A DNA stretch of 63,201 nt, filler included, from Octopus bimaculoides (Eukaryota), in NCBI RefSeq assembly GCF_001194135.2. It is 9 parts of 8 records of this genome, joined end to end, with 100 filler letters (N's around TTAATTAATTAA, not from the genome) between each part and the next. Parts side by side here need not be neighbours in the genome. Positions count along the whole stretch, not along the records: positions 44,677 to 51,071 come from NC_068990.1; 8 more parts are not named here. One strand, 5' to 3'. Numbering within the stretch: position 1 is the stretch's first letter; the number at the start of each line of letters is the position of its first letter. The translations under genes were made by a program, and so were the position numbers. Below, in pieces: positions 44,553-51,071 of the stretch. Under the pieces are notes generated by a model. That model ran no database searches and was not told the origin of the DNA. It saw only the letters and a program-made list of their open reading frames with translations.

Positions 44553-44843
44553 GTATATAATCTACATTTCTTTATANNNNNNNNNNNNNNNNNNNNNNNN
44601 NNNNNNNNNNNNNNNNNNNNTTAATTAATTAANNNNNNNNNNNNNNNNNNNNNNNNNNNNNNNNNNNNNNNNNNNNAACAAATAGTAAATGAGTATATGC
44701 ATATATACGTACAGGTATGTGCATACCGACATCCACCTGTATGTATAGGTGCATATCTGGGTACAGGACATTGCAAACAAAACGTAGACGAGAAAACACA
44801 AGCCACATAGAGAACATTCTTCTTCATCAGCTACCCCCGTATA

Positions 44844-44898
<55 letters not shown>

Positions 44899-45025
44899 AC
44901 ATATATGTATTATATATATGTATGTATGCCTGTATATATGTGAGATAATTTTCAGTATTAAAGTGAAAGTAATGCAGTGAAAATATGACATTACAACATA
45001 CAGTGTGTACTTATGTACACATACT

Positions 45026-45059
<34 letters not shown>

Positions 45060-45398
45060 CATATGTGTGTGTACATACGTATGCGTGTGTGTATGTATGT
45101 TAATATGTACACATATATGTATATATATTTGTGGGTACATACGTATGCGTGTGTGTGTGTGTGCATGTATATTTGTTTATATGTATTTATATGTACACAT
45201 ATTTATGTATATATATATAAGTGCGTGTGTCTGTGTACATTGTATGCGCGCGCGCTTGCGTCAGTGCGTGTGTGTGTGTGTGTGTGTACAAACATACATT
45301 ATGTGGGTGATATTTTCAACCGAGACGTTACAATCTAATCTGTTCCTTCAGGTGCCTGAATTCTGAGTATTTTTATTTTTTTTTTTTTTTTTTTTTTT

Positions 45399-45794
45399 TA
45401 CTTGTTTCAGTCTTTTGACTGCGGCCATGCTGGAGCACCGCCTTTAGTCGAAGAAATCGACCCCAGGACTTATTCTTTGGAAGCCTAGTACTTATTCTAT
45501 CGGTCCCTTTTGCCGAACCACGAAGTTACGGGGACATAAACACACCAGCATCGGTTGTCAAGCGATGTTGGGGGGACAAACACAGACACACAAACACACA
45601 CACACACATATATATATATATACATATATACGACGGGCTTCATTCAGTTTCCGTCTACCAAATCCACTCACAAGGCTTTGATCGGCCCGAGGCTATAGTC
45701 GAAGACACTTGCTCAAGGTGCCACGCAGTGGGACTGAACCCGGAACCATGTGGTTGGTAAGCAAGCTACTTACCACACAGCCACTCCTGCGCCT
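45399..45794 (-). mobile_element. tRNA-derived SINE family B with central microsatellite; other copies 45965-46126 (-), 54056-54460 (+), 56560-56780 (+)
   Basis: Head AGGCGCAGGAGTGGCTGTGTGG...GGTTCAGTCCC; tail ...TGAAACAAGTAA. Confidence 0.88.
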
Positions 45795-45907
45795 ATGAAT
45801 ACGAAAAAAGAAAGACTCTTTTTTTCAGTAATTAATAATAAATACAAAAATGATAGATCTTAGCCTTCCAAATAAAACCTGTCCCGCTTCTATACTTTTA
45901 CTTACGT

Positions 45908-45964
45908 CCACATGGTGCCTCCTCCACATGGTGCCTCCTCCACATGGTGCCTCCTCCACATGGT
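45908..45964 (+). repeat. 16-bp tandem repeat (CCACATGGTGCCTCCT)x3.5
   Basis: Perfect units, at the edge of a truncated SINE. Confidence 0.9.
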
Positions 45965-46355
45965 CTCTTTTACCGAACCACTAAGTTACGGGGACGTAAA
46001 CACACCAGCATCGGTTGTCTACCAAATCCACTCAGAAGGCTTTGGTCGGCCCGAAGCTATAGTAGAAGGCACTTGCCCAAGATGCCACGCAGTGGGACTG
46101 AACCCGGGACCATGTGGTTGGTAAGTATGAACATATATTTACTAGATTACTGATATCTATCAATGGTTTTCCCCATTGTGTTGACGTGCCAGTTTCTGTC
46201 ATTAACAAAAATGTCACTACGTTTGCCGACACGCGTATGCTAGTTTTAATACAATACACCATTTCCTCAAAAGAAAGAAAGAAAAAGGAAAAAAGTAGAA
46301 ATCTCATAGGGTTCATTTAATCATTGGTTAGCAGTATCAGACCCTACCCCACTTG

Positions 46356-46425
46356 GGTACTATTAAAGCAGCACGGACCCGAACGCGCAGTCGCGCGTCC
46401 GGGACCGTGCTGCTTTAGTAGTACC
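46356..46425. other. 70-nt GC-rich hairpin (33-bp arms, 4-nt loop)
   Basis: GGTACTATTAAAGCAGCACGGACCCGAACGCGC-AGTC-GCGCGTCCGGGACCGTGCTGCTTTAGTAGTACC; 30/33 Watson-Crick pairs plus one G.U. Confidence 0.85.
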
Positions 46426-47638
46426 AGTAATGATTTGGCTGTTATTTCTAGCATATCGAGTAATTGTGTTATTTAACCTCTAGGCAATATTAATCCAGCT
46501 TCTCACTATCATAAAGCGCATTGCAATAACCCTAACCCTGGTGATGGTCACAACCGGAGCGCTTAAAAAAAGACTAGCTACAGCTTTAAGGCTTTAGGAA
46601 AAGAGTGGATGGTCACAGTTGGAACGCTTTTAAAAATCAAGATAGTCATGGTTTGAGCCCTCTAGATAAAAGCTTGCTTTTGTGCATCGGCGCGCGCATG
46701 TGTAAAAAAATCGGGCTCGTTCTTTTCGATTTTGTAAATATTTTATTCTGGTTTCCCGACGTCCTAAATTGCAGGTGAAACTCGACCCAGATTTAGACAT
46801 AAAATTTATGAGTTGTTTTGCATATTTATGTCTAAATCTGTGATCAAAGAGTCCAGCCGTGTCCATTCCATCGGGAACATTGTCCAATATCATTTTTCTC
46901 TCTCTTTTGCATTAATAAAAATTTAAAAAATGTCAATTGAGGTAAAACCTTACTGCTATTTCTAACAAAATAAAATACGTAAAGCTCCCACGTTATTATT
47001 CATTCGATATAACAAAAAGAAACTAGTTTTGTAATCTCTACGTGGTTGCTTCACTTGCTAGAAATAGCAGCACTATCTCATTTAATGCACACTCGGTTGT
47101 TTTATATTATGCACATAATTGTTTGCGTTTTTTTCTTCTCACGAACCGAGATGGAAGCCTCTACGTGGGTGCCTACGAAAAATTAAATGAGCTGTTATAA
47201 AGGACTTTCTTCTATAATATAACATAATATAATATAATACAATATAATATTTAAATTAACGAAATTAAGTATCTAGGTCATTATAAATTCAGTGCGCAAA
47301 CTTTGAACGGTTTTTTTCTCTATATCCAACAAAATATTTTATAATCAGTAACGATATTATATTTCGTGATCAGTAAAATACCTCTAAATAAGAATTTCTT
47401 CTTAACACGTGTTAAGAGGAAAACTAACATACTTTCTTCGAATTCAGCTATTTATAGAATATCAAAAATTCTCGGGGAAATATAGTTTTTCCCGTTATCT
47501 TCGAGGCTAACGTTATAAATATTGTCATCTCGTTCGCCTTAGCTCATAATTGTTTTGAAAGCTGGAGAGAAGAGTCATCGCGTAATACTTCCCAGGATTT
47601 GTAACTAATTATAAAGGTGCAGAAAAGAAACAGATCCA

Positions 47639-48670
47639 ATGGACCACATCCCGCAGTCCTTCGAAGTCACCGAGGAATTCGGTATTAAATGGACGCATCC
47701 AAACTGTTACAGTTGTCTGGAATATATAGGAGGAGGCAGTTTCAGCAATGTGTCTATGGCTCATAACAAACTTAGTAACTCCACAGTGGCCATCAAAAAA
47801 CTGTCACGGCCGTTTGCCACGTTAATGGACACTAAACGTACATACCGCGAAGTATGTTTGCTAAAGCACATGAAACACAAAAATGTCATCGATCTGGTCG
47901 ATATATTTACAACAGCAATATGTAAAAACGATCTGGATAATCTCTACCTTGTTTCCACATTCTATCCGAGAGATTTGAAAATGATGTTGGAAAGCGAGGA
48001 GATGGGGTTACCCCTCATCAGGTCCTTGGTCTACCAAATATTCTGCGGACTTTATTATATTCATTCAGCTGGGGTCATCCACCGTGACTTAAAACCCAGC
48101 AACATCGGTGTTACTGCTGATAATTGCATCAAAATTATGGATTTTGGCCTGGCCCNNNNNNNNNNAACCCGATGGTACCGAGCACCAGAAATAATCCTGA
48201 ACTGGGAAAAATACAATCAAACAGCAGATGTGTGGTCTGTGGGTTGTATCCTGGGTGAAATGTTAACAAAACGAGCTGTGATACGAGGGCATAATTTCTC
48301 TGACCAAATGAAGCAGATATTATGTCTAGTCGGAACACCGGATTATGAAATGCTAAAGAAATTTACTTGTGAAGAAGCTGTTGCTATGATAAAACAATAT
48401 GGTACTTTTGTAAAACAGGATTTTTCAACTTTTTTTAATACCACAGATGAAGAGACACTTAATCTTTTGGATCAGATATTTAATTTAGATGTAGATAACC
48501 GAATCTCTGTGGATGAGGCAATGAAACATTGTTTCTTTGAGGACCATTTCCAACAGACTGATTTTATGCGTGCACAACATTTTTGTGACAGATATTCCGA
48601 TATGGAATTAAACAAAATAGAATGGTTAGGTCTTATTTACGAGGAAATCAAAAACGTCAATCCTGACTAA
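47639..48670 (+). CDS. Intronless divergent p38-family MAP kinase (MAPK14-like); retrogene candidate
   Basis: Single ORF with p38 hallmarks VAIKKLSRPF, KRTYRE..LLKHMKH.NVI, YIHSAGVIHRDLKPSN, DFGLA, TRWYRAPEI.LNW..YNQT.DVWSVGCI; 10-N gap at 48156-48165 covers the activation loop. Confidence 0.9.
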   Translation: MDHIPQSFEVTEEFGIKWTHPNCYSCLEYIGGGSFSNVSMAHNKLSNSTVAIKKLSRPFATLMDTKRTYREVCLLKHMKHKNVIDLVDIFTTAICKNDLDNLYLVSTFYPRDLKMMLESEEMGLPLIRSLVYQIFCGLYYIHSAGVIHRDLKPSNIGVTADNCIKIMDFGLAXXXXTRWYRAPEIILNWEKYNQTADVWSVGCILGEMLTKRAVIRGHNFSDQMKQILCLVGTPDYEMLKKFTCEEAVAMIKQYGTFVKQDFSTFFNTTDEETLNLLDQIFNLDVDNRISVDEAMKHCFFEDHFQQTDFMRAQHFCDRYSDMELNKIEWLGLIYEEIKNVNPD

Positions 48671-50084
48671 TACACAAATACACACATAAAAGTTTATACC
48701 CGCGCTATTTAAAGTATGTTTTCAGGTCATGAGTTGGTGTTAGCATTTCTCAAGTATTTACACTTCTTTATTATTGTTTCTCAATCTGATCTCTGTTCAA
48801 TATAAAAAATTTAAAGACATATAAATTAAAAACATTGTCGATATTCAGATATCACTGCCTTGATAAACACTGCAAAATTTTTTAATTGAGCAAAAACAAT
48901 AAATGAAGAAGAGAAATATATTTTAAAACAATATCGTGTTTTGTTATCTTTTAGGAATGTATCGTTGATTGTTAATTATTCTCTTAATTTAACAACTTCT
49001 ATTTTCTTAAACTCCCACCACCAGGTTATTTTATAATGCGCGCACTTGTTATATGTCATGCTACAAATAATTACAGGAACTGAGGACCTTTTAATCATTG
49101 TCAATTTCGCATTTACTAATTGGATGTTTATTTCATTGTTGATCGGTGTATCTTGGCTTTTCCTTGTTTATATGCTTGCATTTATTTTGAAATTTTTGTT
49201 TATTTCTACACATCTCTTTGAGTGCTTCCAAACGCGACGATATATATATATATATATATTCGAAACGTCAGGTTAGAATAGAGACAGCTAATGAAGGAAT
49301 ATTCCAAGTGGCTTTCCGTTTTCCTATGTGTTCGTTCCGTTGTCTGTAGTTCATTGTTCTAACGTCCTGTACCCTGATATGCATATATATACACATGTAG
49401 ATGTACATATGTGTATATACATGTATATATATTCTTTGTATTATTATATATATATATATATATAGTGCTTTAATTTTATGTATTTTTAAGAATTTAAATA
49501 TAACGGATCGGTTGTACATTTAAGAGAAATGCGAATCTCCACTTTGTAAGCAAGGCATGTATTTAAGGAAGATTGTCCGTATTTAGTTTCAATGCTATGT
49601 AAATTTGAATTTTTAAAGTTCATGTTTATTTACAAATAGTGAGTAATCCCCCACTTTATAATCGGTACTGTATTGGCGTGAGAGAGAGAGAGAGAGAGAG
49701 GTGGAAAAAATAGTAATCATATATAAATACATATTTTAAGCCAAAAGTCACACAACTAACTTTTGTTTGGTAAATCATTAATGAAAAACTGTCCTAACAG
49801 GTAATTTTTCAATAAGAAAATAGTCCTGGCATTTAGTTTTACATTTAATTATCGTGTTATGAAATAGACGATGAAAGCATTTAGTAATTAAACTACAATA
49901 ACTAGCCTACTACTACTATGTAACTAGTACTTTCAGTTTGTACCACGGTGCATTTTAAGCTTTACAACATCTGCGTACATGCTAATTTATCTCACATGAG
50001 CGAAACAGTTGAAGCTGAGGAAGGTACCATCTGAAGTTGGTGGTATCGTGGTAATGGGTTCTTGGATACATTGTGTCTTTATTT

Positions 50085-50220
50085 CATTCCGTTTGGATTT
50101 GAAAGCAGCACATAAGAACGTGCAACGTAGTCTGATTCGAGAACTTATGCTTTACTCGTTCGATCTGGGCCATAAACGCCGTGGAAGCAACGAAAAACAT
50201 TTGTTGTGCGAAAGGTGATG
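50085..50220 (+). mobile_element. Mariner transposase N-terminal fragment
   Basis: IRELMLYSFDLGH...AVEATKNICCAKG (frameshifted). Confidence 0.6.
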
Positions 50221-50272
50221 GCTCAAGTGAGATCTTATGGTATTAGTTACGAGAGTGTTACTTATAGACTGT

Positions 50273-50622
50273 GGAGGCGCAATGGCCCAGTGGTTAGGGC
50301 AGCGGACTCGCGGTTTCGATTCCCAGACCGGGCATTGTGAGTGTTTATTGAGCGAAAACACCTAAAGCTCCACGAGGCTCCGGCAGGGGATGGTGGCGAA
50401 CCTTGCTGTACTCTTCCACCACAACTTTCTCTCACTCTTTCTTCCTGTTTCTGTTGTACCTGTAATTCAAAGGGTCAGCCTTGTCACGCTGAATATCCCC
50501 GAGAACTACATTAAGGGTACACGTGTCTGTGGAGTGCTCAGCCACTTGCACGTTAATTTCACGAGCAGGCTGTTCCGTTGATCGGATCAACTGGAACCCT
50601 CGTCGTCGTAAGCCAACAACAA
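50273..50622 (+). mobile_element. tRNA-derived SINE family C; another copy 51585-51953 (-) with TSD TAACCACGT
   Basis: GGAGGCGCAATGGCCCAGTGG...GGTTTCGATTCC; homologous to 34105-34485. Confidence 0.88.
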
Positions 50623-51022
50623 CTTATAAATCACGTGGGTTTATTTACATTTCTGAAGACGATCGTCGGTTTCTGTAAAAAATTTTAGATTTTTTTTTTT
50701 TTACATATGGAGTTGTGGGGAAAAGGGGATCTCTTGAAGTCGGCGTAAAAGCGAAAGAGACAGAGAAAGCGCGACTGGATCAGGGAAGTTCTTTTGAAGT
50801 TGGCGTGACGTGTGTGTGCGTGTGCGAGACAAAGTGTGGTGTGTATGTGAAGTTGTTTTGTTAGTATGTGTGAAGAGACAGAGCAATGGTGCTGGTGTGT
50901 GTATATGTGTGAGAAAGAGAGATAGGGTAGGTATGAATGGCTTCAGTAACACAACACACGCGCACACACACATATATAAATACAAGATCTACATATACAT
51001 ATATATGTATAGACATACATAG

Positions 51023-51071
<49 letters not shown>

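What the first reader, a model, noticed from the sequence alone, without database searches (positions are those of the whole stretch)
47639..48670. Intronless, fast-evolving p38 MAPK paralogue with its activation loop hidden in a gap
Seen: one open reading frame with VAIK, the alphaC Glu, HRDLKPSN, DFG and APE intact, despite replacement of much of the surface; no stops or frameshifts in the visible sequence, in a region where other insertions are decayed. Only 4 codons separate DFGLA from TRWY in the assembly versus 12 in canonical p38 (RHTDDEMTGYVA), but 10 of those 12 bases are placeholder Ns. Established: animal p38 genes are multi-exon, and TGY dual phosphorylation is the activation switch. 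Inference: a retroposed p38 kept by selection and neofunctionalised, possibly tissue-restricted. A candidate 5' UTR acceptor (cttcccAG 47594-5) and AATAAA (48898) flank it.
Basis: partly seen in the sequence, partly recalled or inferred. Interest (0 to 1): 0.75.

Follow-up and report, generated by a model that had tools for sequence, protein, structure and literature searches.

The report
Intact intronless octopus p38-like kinase gene
This is an intact, selectively maintained, intron-free p38-type stress kinase gene of Octopus bimaculoides whose "missing" activation loop is only an assembly gap, and it belongs to an undescribed family of such genes shared by octopuses, argonauts and cuttlefish.

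Summary
The ORF at 47639-48670 (+) is real. The window piece is Octopus bimaculoides chromosome CM046610.1. The 10-N gap sits exactly where the activation loop should be. An unplaced 718-nt contig of the same assembly carries this copy's diagnostic bases on both sides and bridges the gap with 34 nt, in frame, encoding RQVSLKMTGYVQ. So TGY is intact, with no stop, frameshift or intron.

The gap is an assembly artefact. This gene and an inverted paralogue 14.3 kb away are 100% identical for about 290 nt around the loop through gene conversion, and both copies carry a gap there.

The gene is under purifying selection against its O. vulgaris orthologue: dN/dS 0.17, and 0 indels in 1004 coding nt against 35 in 1736 flank nt.

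It belongs to a discrete coleoid-cephalopod family (Octopus, Argonauta, Sepia). Every genomic copy checked has an intronless CDS. Members are 41-49% identical to canonical p38. All catalytic and phospho-acceptor residues are kept, but the hinge and docking groove are remodelled.

However, this copy arose by local DNA duplication of an already intronless gene, and the proposed acceptor and AATAAA are not conserved. I could not determine whether octopus still has a canonical multi-exon p38.

The parts
47639..48155 (+). N-terminal part of the CDS (Met1 to Ala172 plus the first base of the Arg173 codon). It holds the Gly-rich loop GGGSFS, VAIK Lys53, alphaC Glu71, Ser106 gatekeeper, hinge STFYPRD, HRDLKPSN and DFG.
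   Evidence: ORF list and sequence. The part up to 48154 is annotated in GenBank as a 172-aa half-protein, P0192.
48156..48165 (.). Assembly gap of 10 N. The true content is 34 nt, which completes the codons for RQVSLKMTGYVQ (activation loop with the TGY dual-phosphorylation motif).
   Evidence: Bridged by the same-assembly unplaced contig L008. The O. vulgaris orthologue is identical over this stretch.
48166..48670 (+). C-terminal part of the CDS (last base of the Gln184 codon, TRWYRAPE, the MAPK insert, the L16 region, and stop TAA at 48668-48670). The tail is 7 codons shorter than in O. vulgaris because of a 2-nt deletion just before the stop.
   Evidence: Positions 48167-48667 are annotated as a 167-aa half-protein, P0191.
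48027..48291 (+). Tract 100% identical to the inverted paralogue B2 (L005), interpreted as a gene-conversion tract. It spans the catalytic loop, DFG, the activation loop and the P+1 region, and it contains the gap.
   Evidence: Identity runs of 122 nt and 116 nt on either side of the gap. Orthologues differ by 5-7% over the same stretch. The O. vulgaris paralogues are identical for 172 nt at the same place. The paralogue has a 104-N gap at the same spot.
48292..48310 (+). Eight sites where bridging contig L008 carries the paralogue's (B2) bases (GQNFNDQV instead of GHNFSDQM). This is either an allelic conversion tract or an assembly chimera.
47594..47595 (+). It is not conserved in the O. vulgaris orthologue (TCG), although both B2-type paralogues have TAG here. 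Its status is open.
48825..48830 (+). ATTAAA, a candidate polyadenylation signal conserved between O. bimaculoides and O. vulgaris.
   Evidence: Inference only, with no transcript evidence.
46425..47638 (+). 5' flank collinear with the O. vulgaris orthologous locus (92% identity, many indels). It includes blocks about 150 nt and about 30 nt upstream of the ATG that are also shared with the paralogues.

Best explanation
The window carries a functional single-exon gene of Octopus bimaculoides for a divergent p38-type MAP kinase.

Shown:
- The reading frame is complete once the assembly gap is filled. The hidden 34 nt encode a normal-length activation loop with Thr-Gly-Tyr.
- Every catalytic residue is present (Lys53, Glu71, HRD, Lys152, Asn155, DFG), as is every arginine that coordinates phospho-Thr and phospho-Tyr.
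- The gene is under purifying selection.
- It lies head-to-head with a paralogue 14.3 kb away. The two exchange sequence by gene conversion across the catalytic-loop to P+1 region.
- That roughly 290-nt exact inverted repeat is why the short-read assembly left a gap at the same place in both copies.
- The gene belongs to a discrete family found in Octopus, Argonauta and Sepia. All six genomic CDS examined are intronless.

Inferred:
- The family descends from one ancient retroposition (or cDNA-mediated intron loss) of a p38 gene before the octopod-decapod split, and then expanded by local DNA duplication.
- The protein is switched on by an MKK3/6-type kinase through TGY phosphorylation and phosphorylates Ser/Thr-Pro sites.
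- Its remodelled D-motif docking surface and hinge give it a partner set and inhibitor profile different from canonical p38. The docking changes are CD Asp313 to Gln, CD Asp315 to Thr, ED Glu160 to Ala, Phe129 to Ser, His126 to Leu and Gln120 to Glu. The hinge change is Met109-Gly110 to Tyr-Pro.
For: - ORF and motifs. Pkinase 6e-52. PDB best hits are all p38.
- The window is 100% identical to CM046610.1.
- Gap bridged in frame by L008.
- The O. vulgaris, O. sinensis and Argonauta orthologues and paralogues all read DFGLARQV(S/N)LKMTGYVQ(T/S)RWYRAPE.
- Selection against the O. vulgaris orthologue: dN 0.032, dS 0.193, omega 0.17, Fisher p=7e-11. Non-synonymous divergence is 0.42 of flank divergence, p=6e-6. 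There are 0 indels in 1004 coding nt against 35 events in 1736 flank nt, P about 2e-9.
- Omega is 0.06-0.12 against Argonauta.
- Flanks are collinear with the O. vulgaris chromosome.
- Gene conversion: 122 + 116 nt of paralogue identity around the gap, 172 nt in O. vulgaris. Within-species paralogue dS is 0.26-0.28, against 0.35-0.37 across species.
- The paralogue has a gap at the same place.
- Intronless CDS: gene span equals CDS length.
- Family is monophyletic at 100% bootstrap.
- In the family-profile search the members score 656-681 bits and the best single-domain canonical p38 467 bits. Two double-kinase entries scored 573-576.
- The full-length members share a single 50%-identity representative among 1.84 billion. 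The only other family entry listed is a truncated half-model.
- Sepia esculenta RNA-seq contigs carry a B-group member.
- Residue table.
- AlphaFold model of the orthologue: pLDDT 89.5. Best structural match is dual-phosphorylated p38alpha, TM 0.91, rmsd 1.6 A.
Against: - The bridging contig is unplaced and carries an 8-site patch of paralogue type. It may be a haplotig or a chimera. The loop sequence of this particular copy is therefore very probable but not read directly in place.
- No transcript of this copy or its orthologues was seen. The 90% clusters of the O. vulgaris orthologue and of the paralogue hold no RNA-seq-derived members.
- No retroposition hallmarks (poly(A) remnant, target-site duplications) survive, and no intron-bearing parent was found.
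- NJ support for placing the family with p38 rather than JNK or ERK is only 56%.
- NG86 dS (0.19) is about twice the flank divergence (0.08), so omega may be somewhat underestimated.
Confidence: 0.85

Rival explanations
1. Retrogene replacement. The intronless family is not an extra set of paralogues but the only p38 that coleoid cephalopods have, the canonical multi-exon gene having been lost.
For: - Three top-120 lists contain many molluscan, annelid, arthropod and vertebrate canonical p38s. None comes from Octopus, Argonauta or Sepia, although annotated proteomes of those genomes are in the database.
- A cephalopod parent should share stem-lineage substitutions with the family profile and so rank near the top. 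It does not.
- The slow C-type member (98.1% identical between O. bimaculoides and O. vulgaris) could serve as the general p38.
- Squid axoplasm shows pharmacology sensitive to p38 inhibitors, but which gene product is responsible is unknown (PMC3680447).
Against: - Only the best 120 of 3000-6000 hits are visible per search, so absence from the lists is weak evidence.
- No genome-wide tblastn was possible.
- Unnamed mollusc-like canonical p38 transcripts of unknown species do exist: P0202 from a marine metatranscriptome and P0208.
Confidence: 0.3
2. The gap hides a lesion (stop, frameshift, intron or lost TGY) in this particular copy, making it a pseudogene or an unregulated kinase.
For: The gap content is not read in place. 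The bridging contig is unplaced and partly paralogue-like.
Against: - L008 carries all 13 left-hand bases diagnostic for this copy, and the copy-specific bases beyond the patch, and it reads through in frame.
- The gap lies inside a tract where the two paralogues are otherwise identical. In O. vulgaris both copies are intact there.
- Both halves of the ORF show omega 0.17 and no indels.
Confidence: 0.04
3. A decaying retrocopy or unconstrained duplicate that merely has not yet acquired stops.
For: The CDS is intronless. Overall nucleotide identity to O. vulgaris in the CDS (94%) is only slightly above that of the flanks (92%).
Against: - Substitutions are concentrated at synonymous sites: omega 0.17, p=7e-11.
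- There are zero indels where about 20 are expected.
- Orthologues are intact in O. vulgaris, O. sinensis and Argonauta. Related genes are intact in Sepia after a split old enough to saturate dS.
Confidence: 0.02
4. The family is not p38-derived but an independent MAPK lineage (for example JNK-like) that converged on TGY.
For: - NJ bootstrap for {ERK2, JNK1} against the rest is only 56%.
- A few JNK-like residues occur (LCG..HSAG, SVGCI.GEM), seen by eye.
- Only one of the three CD acidic residues remains.
Against: - phmmer scores are 298-358 bits to p38, against 198-243 to JNK1 and ERK2.
- Identity is 42-47% to p38, against 35-40% to JNK1 and ERK2.
- The 120 best database hits and the 50 best structural matches are all p38.
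- The alignment with human p38alpha has no indel from residue 20 to the C-terminal tail, including the activation-loop length.
Confidence: 0.05

Closest known systems
Canonical animal p38 MAPK (human MAPK14/p38alpha, MAPK11/p38beta; molluscan p38)
   Same: - Same fold: TM 0.91 to phospho-p38alpha.
- Same length, with no indels across the kinase core.
- TGY activation loop of p38 length.
- All catalytic and phospho-residue-binding positions identical.
- Best sequence matches.
   Different: - 41-49% identity, whereas canonical p38s from cnidarians to vertebrates share 65-80%.
- Intronless CDS.
- Gly36 to Ser.
- Gatekeeper Thr106 to Ser.
- Hinge His-Leu-Met-Gly-Ala changed to Thr-Phe-Tyr-Pro-Arg.
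- Docking groove: Phe129 to Ser, His126 to Leu, Gln120 to Glu.
- CD Asp313 and Asp315 lost. ED Glu160 lost.
Lineage-specific diverged p38 paralogues of other invertebrates (Drosophila p38c, C. elegans pmk-3, Helobdella and sponge paralogues; table in PMC9846432)
   Same: An independent, lineage-restricted duplication of p38 with a long branch relative to the conserved copy.
   Different: - Here the whole family is intronless and forms a local cluster with ongoing gene conversion.
- TGY is retained. Drosophila p38c has lost it (own knowledge).
- The conserved 'sister' copy has not been found in cephalopods.
- No cephalopod is treated in that paper.
Functional retrogenes and retrogene replacement (for example amphioxus SYCP1, PMC5803294; teleost intronless opsins, PMC10339062)
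   Same: Single-exon coding sequence derived from a normally multi-exon gene family, maintained by selection and then duplicated further.
   Different: - No parent gene, poly(A) remnant or target-site duplication was identified.
- The event predates the octopod-decapod split.
- The copy in this window arose by DNA-level duplication of an already intronless gene.
Public gene models for this locus and its relatives (XP_014789821.2 'MAPK11, partial'; CAI9729300.1 'MAPK14' O. vulgaris; XP_029640821.1 'HOG1' O. sinensis)
   Same: Same gene or its orthologues. The sequences are already deposited.
   Different: - The names are automatic and inconsistent (MAPK11, 12, 14, HOG1, p38b-like, 'uncharacterized').
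- In the O. bimaculoides chromosome assembly the gene is split into two half-models by the gap.
- No paper describing the family was found.

Membership tests
p38 subfamily of MAP kinases | Protein kinase domain with the complete catalytic apparatus (VAIK Lys, alphaC Glu, HRD, DFG, APE) | tested here: met
   Pfam Pkinase 6e-52. Residue table. Coordinates.
p38 subfamily of MAP kinases | Thr-Gly-Tyr dual-phosphorylation motif in an activation loop of p38 length | tested here: met
   Hidden by the gap in the window. Read in the same-genome bridging contig L008 (RQVSLKMTGYVQ, 12 residues as in canonical p38) and in all ten family members.
p38 subfamily of MAP kinases | Closer to p38 than to JNK or ERK in sequence and fold | tested here: met
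   298-316 bits to p38 against 198-208 to JNK1 and ERK2. All top database and Foldseek hits are p38.
p38 subfamily of MAP kinases | Phylogenetic placement inside the p38 clade | tested here: inconclusive
   The NJ tree places the family with p38, but the split from JNK1 and ERK2 has only 56% bootstrap. The family sits on a long branch.
p38 subfamily of MAP kinases | Acidic common-docking (CD) patch Asp313/Asp315/Asp316 and ED site Glu160/Asp161 | tested here: not met
   Only Asp316 and Asp161 are retained in this gene. Asp313 is Gln, Asp315 is Thr, Glu160 is Ala. This feature is characteristic rather than strictly defining.
p38 subfamily of MAP kinases | Activation by MKK3/6 and inhibition by pyridinyl-imidazoles (small gatekeeper) | not testable with these tools
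   The gatekeeper is Ser (small), but the hinge is changed. Biochemistry is needed.
Retrogene (retroposed gene copy) | Lacks the introns of the parental gene family | tested here: met
   Single ORF in the window. Gene span equals CDS length in the six related genomic loci. That canonical p38 genes are multi-exon with conserved intron positions is established knowledge (Muller et al. 2002, cited in PMC9846432).
Retrogene (retroposed gene copy) | Poly(A) remnant and target-site duplications at the insertion | tested here: not met
   There is no conserved A-tract at the end of paralogue or orthologue homology. The A-run in O. vulgaris at about +230 is not shared. This is expected for an event older than the octopod-decapod split, so it is uninformative.
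Retrogene (retroposed gene copy) | Identifiable intron-containing parent elsewhere in the genome | tested here: inconclusive
   No cephalopod canonical p38 appears among the visible hits of three searches. The whole genome could not be searched.

The most novel reading that the evidence does not exclude
Coleoid cephalopods may have lost the ancestral multi-exon p38 and run their whole p38 stress pathway on this intronless family. On this reading there is a slow 'housekeeping' C-type gene and fast-evolving A/B-type genes with rewired docking grooves. The family would then be an ancient retrogene replacement of a core signalling kinase, kept partly homogeneous by gene conversion.
Probability: 0.25. 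Interest if true: 0.65.

Novelty: new variant of a known kind. Interest (0 to 1): 0.42.

Why it matters
For annotation: the gene is split into two partial models in the O. bimaculoides chromosome assembly, and so is its paralogue. Both can be repaired with an existing unplaced contig.

For biology: p38 is among the most conserved animal kinases, 65-80% identical from jellyfish to humans. Here a whole lineage carries a cluster of intronless, 41-49%-identical versions. They keep the on-switch and catalytic machinery but have altered the surfaces that choose activators, phosphatases, substrates and drugs. That is a natural experiment in rewiring MAPK docking specificity.

It also affects how anti-phospho-p38 blots and p38-inhibitor experiments in squid and octopus should be read.

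If the canonical gene is truly absent, this would be a rare retrogene replacement of a core signalling component.

Tried and rejected
1. Canonical octopus p38 (the intron-bearing parent). I searched with the window protein, with an annelid-like canonical p38 (P0014), and with a profile of the family. No cephalopod entry appeared among the 120 shown each time. I screened unnamed canonical-like proteins by nearest named neighbour and looked up two candidates. P0202 comes from a marine metatranscriptome (ERR1719239). P0208 comes from SRR17272718, which no paper in the library names. Unresolved.

2. Literature on a cephalopod intronless or retrogene p38, an octopus MAPK family survey, or 'HOG1' in octopus: nothing relevant.

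3. Retroposition hallmarks. Flank alignments show no shared poly(A) remnant.

4. 5'UTR intron. I compared Sepia esculenta transcript contigs with the related genomic contig L007. Similarity stops about 25-30 nt upstream of the ATG, as between the Octopus paralogues by BLAST. This cannot separate an exon boundary from plain UTR divergence.

5. Rfam and tRNA scans of the piece gave only sub-threshold miRNA-like hits in microsatellite sequence and no tRNA.

6. Pseudogene, contaminant and non-p38 readings were considered and rejected (see the rival explanations).

7. The exhaustive representative search found no additional, more distant family cluster, for example from Nautilus or other molluscs.
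Full report
WHAT IS THERE

The piece 44677-51071 contains one long ORF on the + strand, 47639-48670, of 343 codons as assembled. It has the full set of kinase motifs:
- GGGSFS: 47729-47746
- VAIK: 47786-47797
- alphaC Glu (YREV): 47843-47854
- HRDLKPSN: 48080-48103
- DFG: 48140-48148
- TRWYRAPE: 48167-48190

Pfam gives Pkinase at E=6e-52. The 60 best solved-structure matches are all MAPK11 or MAPK14, E about 1e-82.

THE GAP (tested first)

The 10 N at 48156-48165 lie between GCC-C and A-ACC. Both sides are therefore in one frame for any true length of 1 mod 3.

The window piece is 100% identical (6395/6395) to Octopus bimaculoides GCA_001194135.2 chromosome CM046610.1, about 23,577,667-23,584,061. 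There the gene is annotated as two half-proteins of 172 and 167 aa.

The same assembly holds an unplaced 718-nt contig, LGKD02124281.1 (L008; XP_014789821.2, 'MAPK11, partial').
- Its left 317 nt are identical to the window and carry all 13 bases that distinguish this copy from its paralogue.
- It then reads 34 nt, GACAGGTCAGTCTTAAAATGACGGGTTATGTGCA.
- It then matches the window for 363 nt, except at 8 clustered sites.

The 34 nt complete the codons for RQVSLKMTGYVQ. That is 12 residues, the same number as canonical RHTDDEMTGYVA, with TGY intact and no stop, frameshift or intron. The O. vulgaris orthologue has exactly the same 34 nt. The '4 codons instead of 12' is a placeholder artefact.

WHY THERE IS A GAP

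A paralogue (B2, partial model P0013) lies head-to-head on the opposite strand, with the two ATGs 14.3 kb apart. It has a 104-N gap at exactly the same place, from DFG to WYRAPE.

The two O. bimaculoides copies are 100% identical for 122 nt before and 116 nt after the gap (window 48027-48291). Overall they are 90% identical, so the chance of such a run is about 1.7e-11.

In O. vulgaris the two copies are identical for 172 nt over the same spot, yet orthologues differ by 5-7% there. Within-species paralogue dS (0.26-0.28) is lower than cross-species paralogue dS (0.35-0.37).

This is concerted evolution by gene conversion between inverted repeats. An exact repeat of about 290 nt is what a short-read assembler fails to place, so both copies have gaps and the bridging piece was left unplaced.

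The 8-site patch of paralogue type in L008 (48292-48310) is either an allelic conversion tract or a graph chimera.

ORTHOLOGY AND SELECTION

The flanks are collinear with O. vulgaris chromosome OX597823.1 around CAI9729300.1 (P0001), so the contig is not a contaminant.

Against that orthologue:
- Coding identity is 94.1% at the nucleotide level and 93.5% at the protein level.
- dN is 0.032 and dS 0.193, giving omega 0.17 (Fisher p=7e-11).
- NG86 dS is about twice the flank substitution divergence (7.7%). Using the flanks as the neutral yardstick, the ratio is 0.42 (p=6e-6).
- There are no indels in 1004 aligned coding nt, against 35 indel events in 1736 flank nt. About 20 would be expected, P about 2e-9.
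- The only coding indel is a 2-nt deletion in the non-conserved tail, which ends the O. bimaculoides protein 7 residues early.

Omega against Argonauta is 0.06-0.12, with dS saturated. The gene is maintained by selection.

THE FAMILY

Database searches find only ten full-length relatives above canonical p38.
- Group A: Octopus and Argonauta, 72-94% identical to the window protein.
- Group B: P0005-7, 55-57% identical.
- Group C: P0008-10, 51-54% identical, including O. bimaculoides LOC106880370. That gene lies 34 kb downstream of the window gene, in convergent orientation.

The three O. bimaculoides genes occupy about 51 kb.

In every genomic locus examined the gene span equals the CDS length:
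- O. vulgaris A1 and A2
- O. sinensis A2
- Argonauta A
- O. bimaculoides C
- the B and C genes of an ENA cephalopod-like assembly

The intronless CDS is therefore ancestral to the family.

Group B member P0178 is assembled as contigs of about 2.4 kb in 125 sequencing runs. Two of these are named as Sepia esculenta larval RNA-seq in PMC10466719 and PMC10442824. The family therefore predates the octopod-decapod split and is transcribed in a cuttlefish.

Further points on the family:
- It is monophyletic at 100% NJ bootstrap.
- With the family profile its members score 656-681 bits. The best single-domain canonical p38 scores 467 bits, and two double-kinase entries score 573-576.
- In the exhaustive search its full-length members share one 50%-identity representative among 1.84 billion. 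No intermediate cluster was found.
- It is 41-49% identical to canonical p38s, which are 65-80% identical to one another from cnidarians to vertebrates.
- Within the family the window's lineage is the fastest. Between the same two species, A-type is 93.5% identical and C-type 98.1%.

IS IT p38, AND HOW DOES IT LIKELY WORK?

Evidence that it is p38:
- phmmer gives 298-316 bits to p38, against 198-208 to human JNK1 and ERK2. The typed human sequences were verified against the PDB.
- The alignment with human p38alpha needs no indel from about residue 20 to the C-terminal tail, so the numbering coincides.
- An AlphaFold model of the O. vulgaris orthologue has mean pLDDT 89.5 and pTM 0.90. It superposes best on dual-phosphorylated p38alpha (9cj2_A, TM 0.91, rmsd 1.6 A). 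All 50 top structural matches are p38.
- NJ support for the split from JNK and ERK is only 56%. The tree alone is inconclusive, but everything else points to p38.

Conserved in all members: Lys53, Arg67 (Lys in one B-group member), Arg70, Glu71, His148-Arg-Asp150, Lys152, Asn155, Asp168-Phe-Gly, Arg173, Thr180-Gly-Tyr182, Arg186, Arg189 and Glu192.

Changed family-wide:
- Gly36 to Ser
- gatekeeper Thr106 to Ser
- hinge His-Leu-Met-Gly-Ala to Thr-(Phe/Tyr)-Tyr-(Pro/Ser/Thr)-(Lys/Arg/Thr/Gln)
- Phe129 to Ser in nine of the ten members (Tyr in one)
- His126 to Leu/Arg/Gln
- Gln120 to Glu/Asn/Gly

Also changed in this gene: CD Asp313 to Gln, CD Asp315 to Thr and ED Glu160 to Ala.

Inference: this is a catalytically competent MAPK switched on through TGY. 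Its altered D-motif docking groove and ATP-site hinge imply different activators, phosphatases and substrates, and a different inhibitor profile. It is plausible but untested.

ORIGIN

Canonical p38 genes are multi-exon with intron positions conserved from sponges to humans. This is established knowledge (Muller et al. 2002, cited in PMC9846432).

A single intronless ancestor followed by local DNA duplication is the simplest history. In favour of DNA-level duplication for the window's pair:
- The two copies are inverted neighbours.
- A multiple alignment shows shared blocks up to about 170 nt upstream of the ATG, although BLAST similarity ends about 36 nt upstream and about 55 nt downstream of the CDS.

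No poly(A) remnant or target-site duplication survives, as expected for such an old event.

- The AG at 47594-5 is TCG in the O. vulgaris orthologue, though both B2-type copies have TAG there.
- The AATAAA at 48898 is an A-run in O. vulgaris.
- An ATTAAA at 48825-48830 is conserved.
- No transcript evidence for this copy was obtainable. The 90% clusters of the O. vulgaris orthologue and of the paralogue hold no RNA-seq-derived members.

UNRESOLVED

I could not find a canonical, presumably multi-exon p38 from any cephalopod in the visible part of three searches. Each list contains many other molluscs. Two follow-ups led nowhere. This may simply reflect the 120-hit display limit, or it may mean retrogene replacement. 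I put the latter at about 0.25-0.3.

p38-inhibitor-sensitive activity exists in squid axoplasm (PMC3680447), but the gene responsible is not known.

KNOWN OR NEW

The sequences are public under inconsistent automatic names: MAPK11, 12, 14, HOG1, p38b-like and 'uncharacterized'. No paper in the library describes an intronless or cephalopod-specific p38 family. A survey of p38 evolution lists lineage-specific diverged paralogues in flies, nematodes, leeches and sponges, but no cephalopods (PMC9846432).

VERDICT

- The gap hides nothing unusual.
- This copy is a DNA-level duplicate within an old intronless family.
- The flank signals are not conserved.

This is a divergent variant of a known kinase kind, of moderate interest. 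The interest would be higher if the canonical gene proves to be absent.

Noticed in passing
window 46356-46425: A near-perfect 70-nt palindrome or hairpin about 1.2 kb upstream of the kinase ATG. DNA fold -36 kcal/mol, z = -8.3. It gives sub-threshold mir-15 hits on both strands (37 and 34 bits against a gathering score of 57). It was not found in the orthologous O. vulgaris locus or in any other fetched locus.
   Followed up: partly
window 45368-45799, 45962-46128 and 50259-50613: Interspersed repeats with many copies (73-92% identity, both orientations) in the other O. bimaculoides and O. vulgaris loci fetched. They look like SINE-like or other high-copy elements and were not classified.
   Followed up: no
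L005 10745-10848 (O. bimaculoides CM046610.1, paralogue B2): The sister gene is broken by a 104-N gap at the identical DFG..WYRAPE position. It is annotated as two partial proteins (P0013, P0198). The first carries a probably spurious 78-residue N-terminal extension upstream of the conserved Met.
   Followed up: partly
L008 (LGKD02124281.1), equivalent to window 48292-48310: The unplaced bridging contig carries 8 paralogue-type bases in 19 nt (GQNFNDQV instead of GHNFSDQM) inside otherwise window-type sequence. This is an allelic gene-conversion tract or an assembly chimera.
   Followed up: partly
window 48655-48670: A 2-nt deletion relative to O. vulgaris and O. sinensis brings TAA into frame 7 codons early. 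The O. bimaculoides protein lacks the CNTLTHT tail.
   Followed up: yes
window 45907-45964: A perfect 16-nt tandem repeat (TCCACATGGTGCCTCC, 3.6 copies) next to one of the interspersed repeats. TA, CA and AT microsatellites lie at 44840-44927, 45049-45194, 49383-49464 and 50993-51071.
   Followed up: no
L006 1-7574 (Argonauta hians BAAFZT010000011.1): Upstream of the Argonauta A-type gene lies a called gene with THAP, BrkDBD and HTH_Tnp_Tc5 domains. It is transposase-derived, and its relation to the kinase is unknown.
   Followed up: no
database hits P0011 (572 aa) and P0012 (519 aa): Two entries carry parts of two p38 kinase domains in one protein: an unnamed metaclust entry and a Triplophysa 'MAPK11'. 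They are probably fused tandem gene models and are unrelated to the finding.
   Followed up: no
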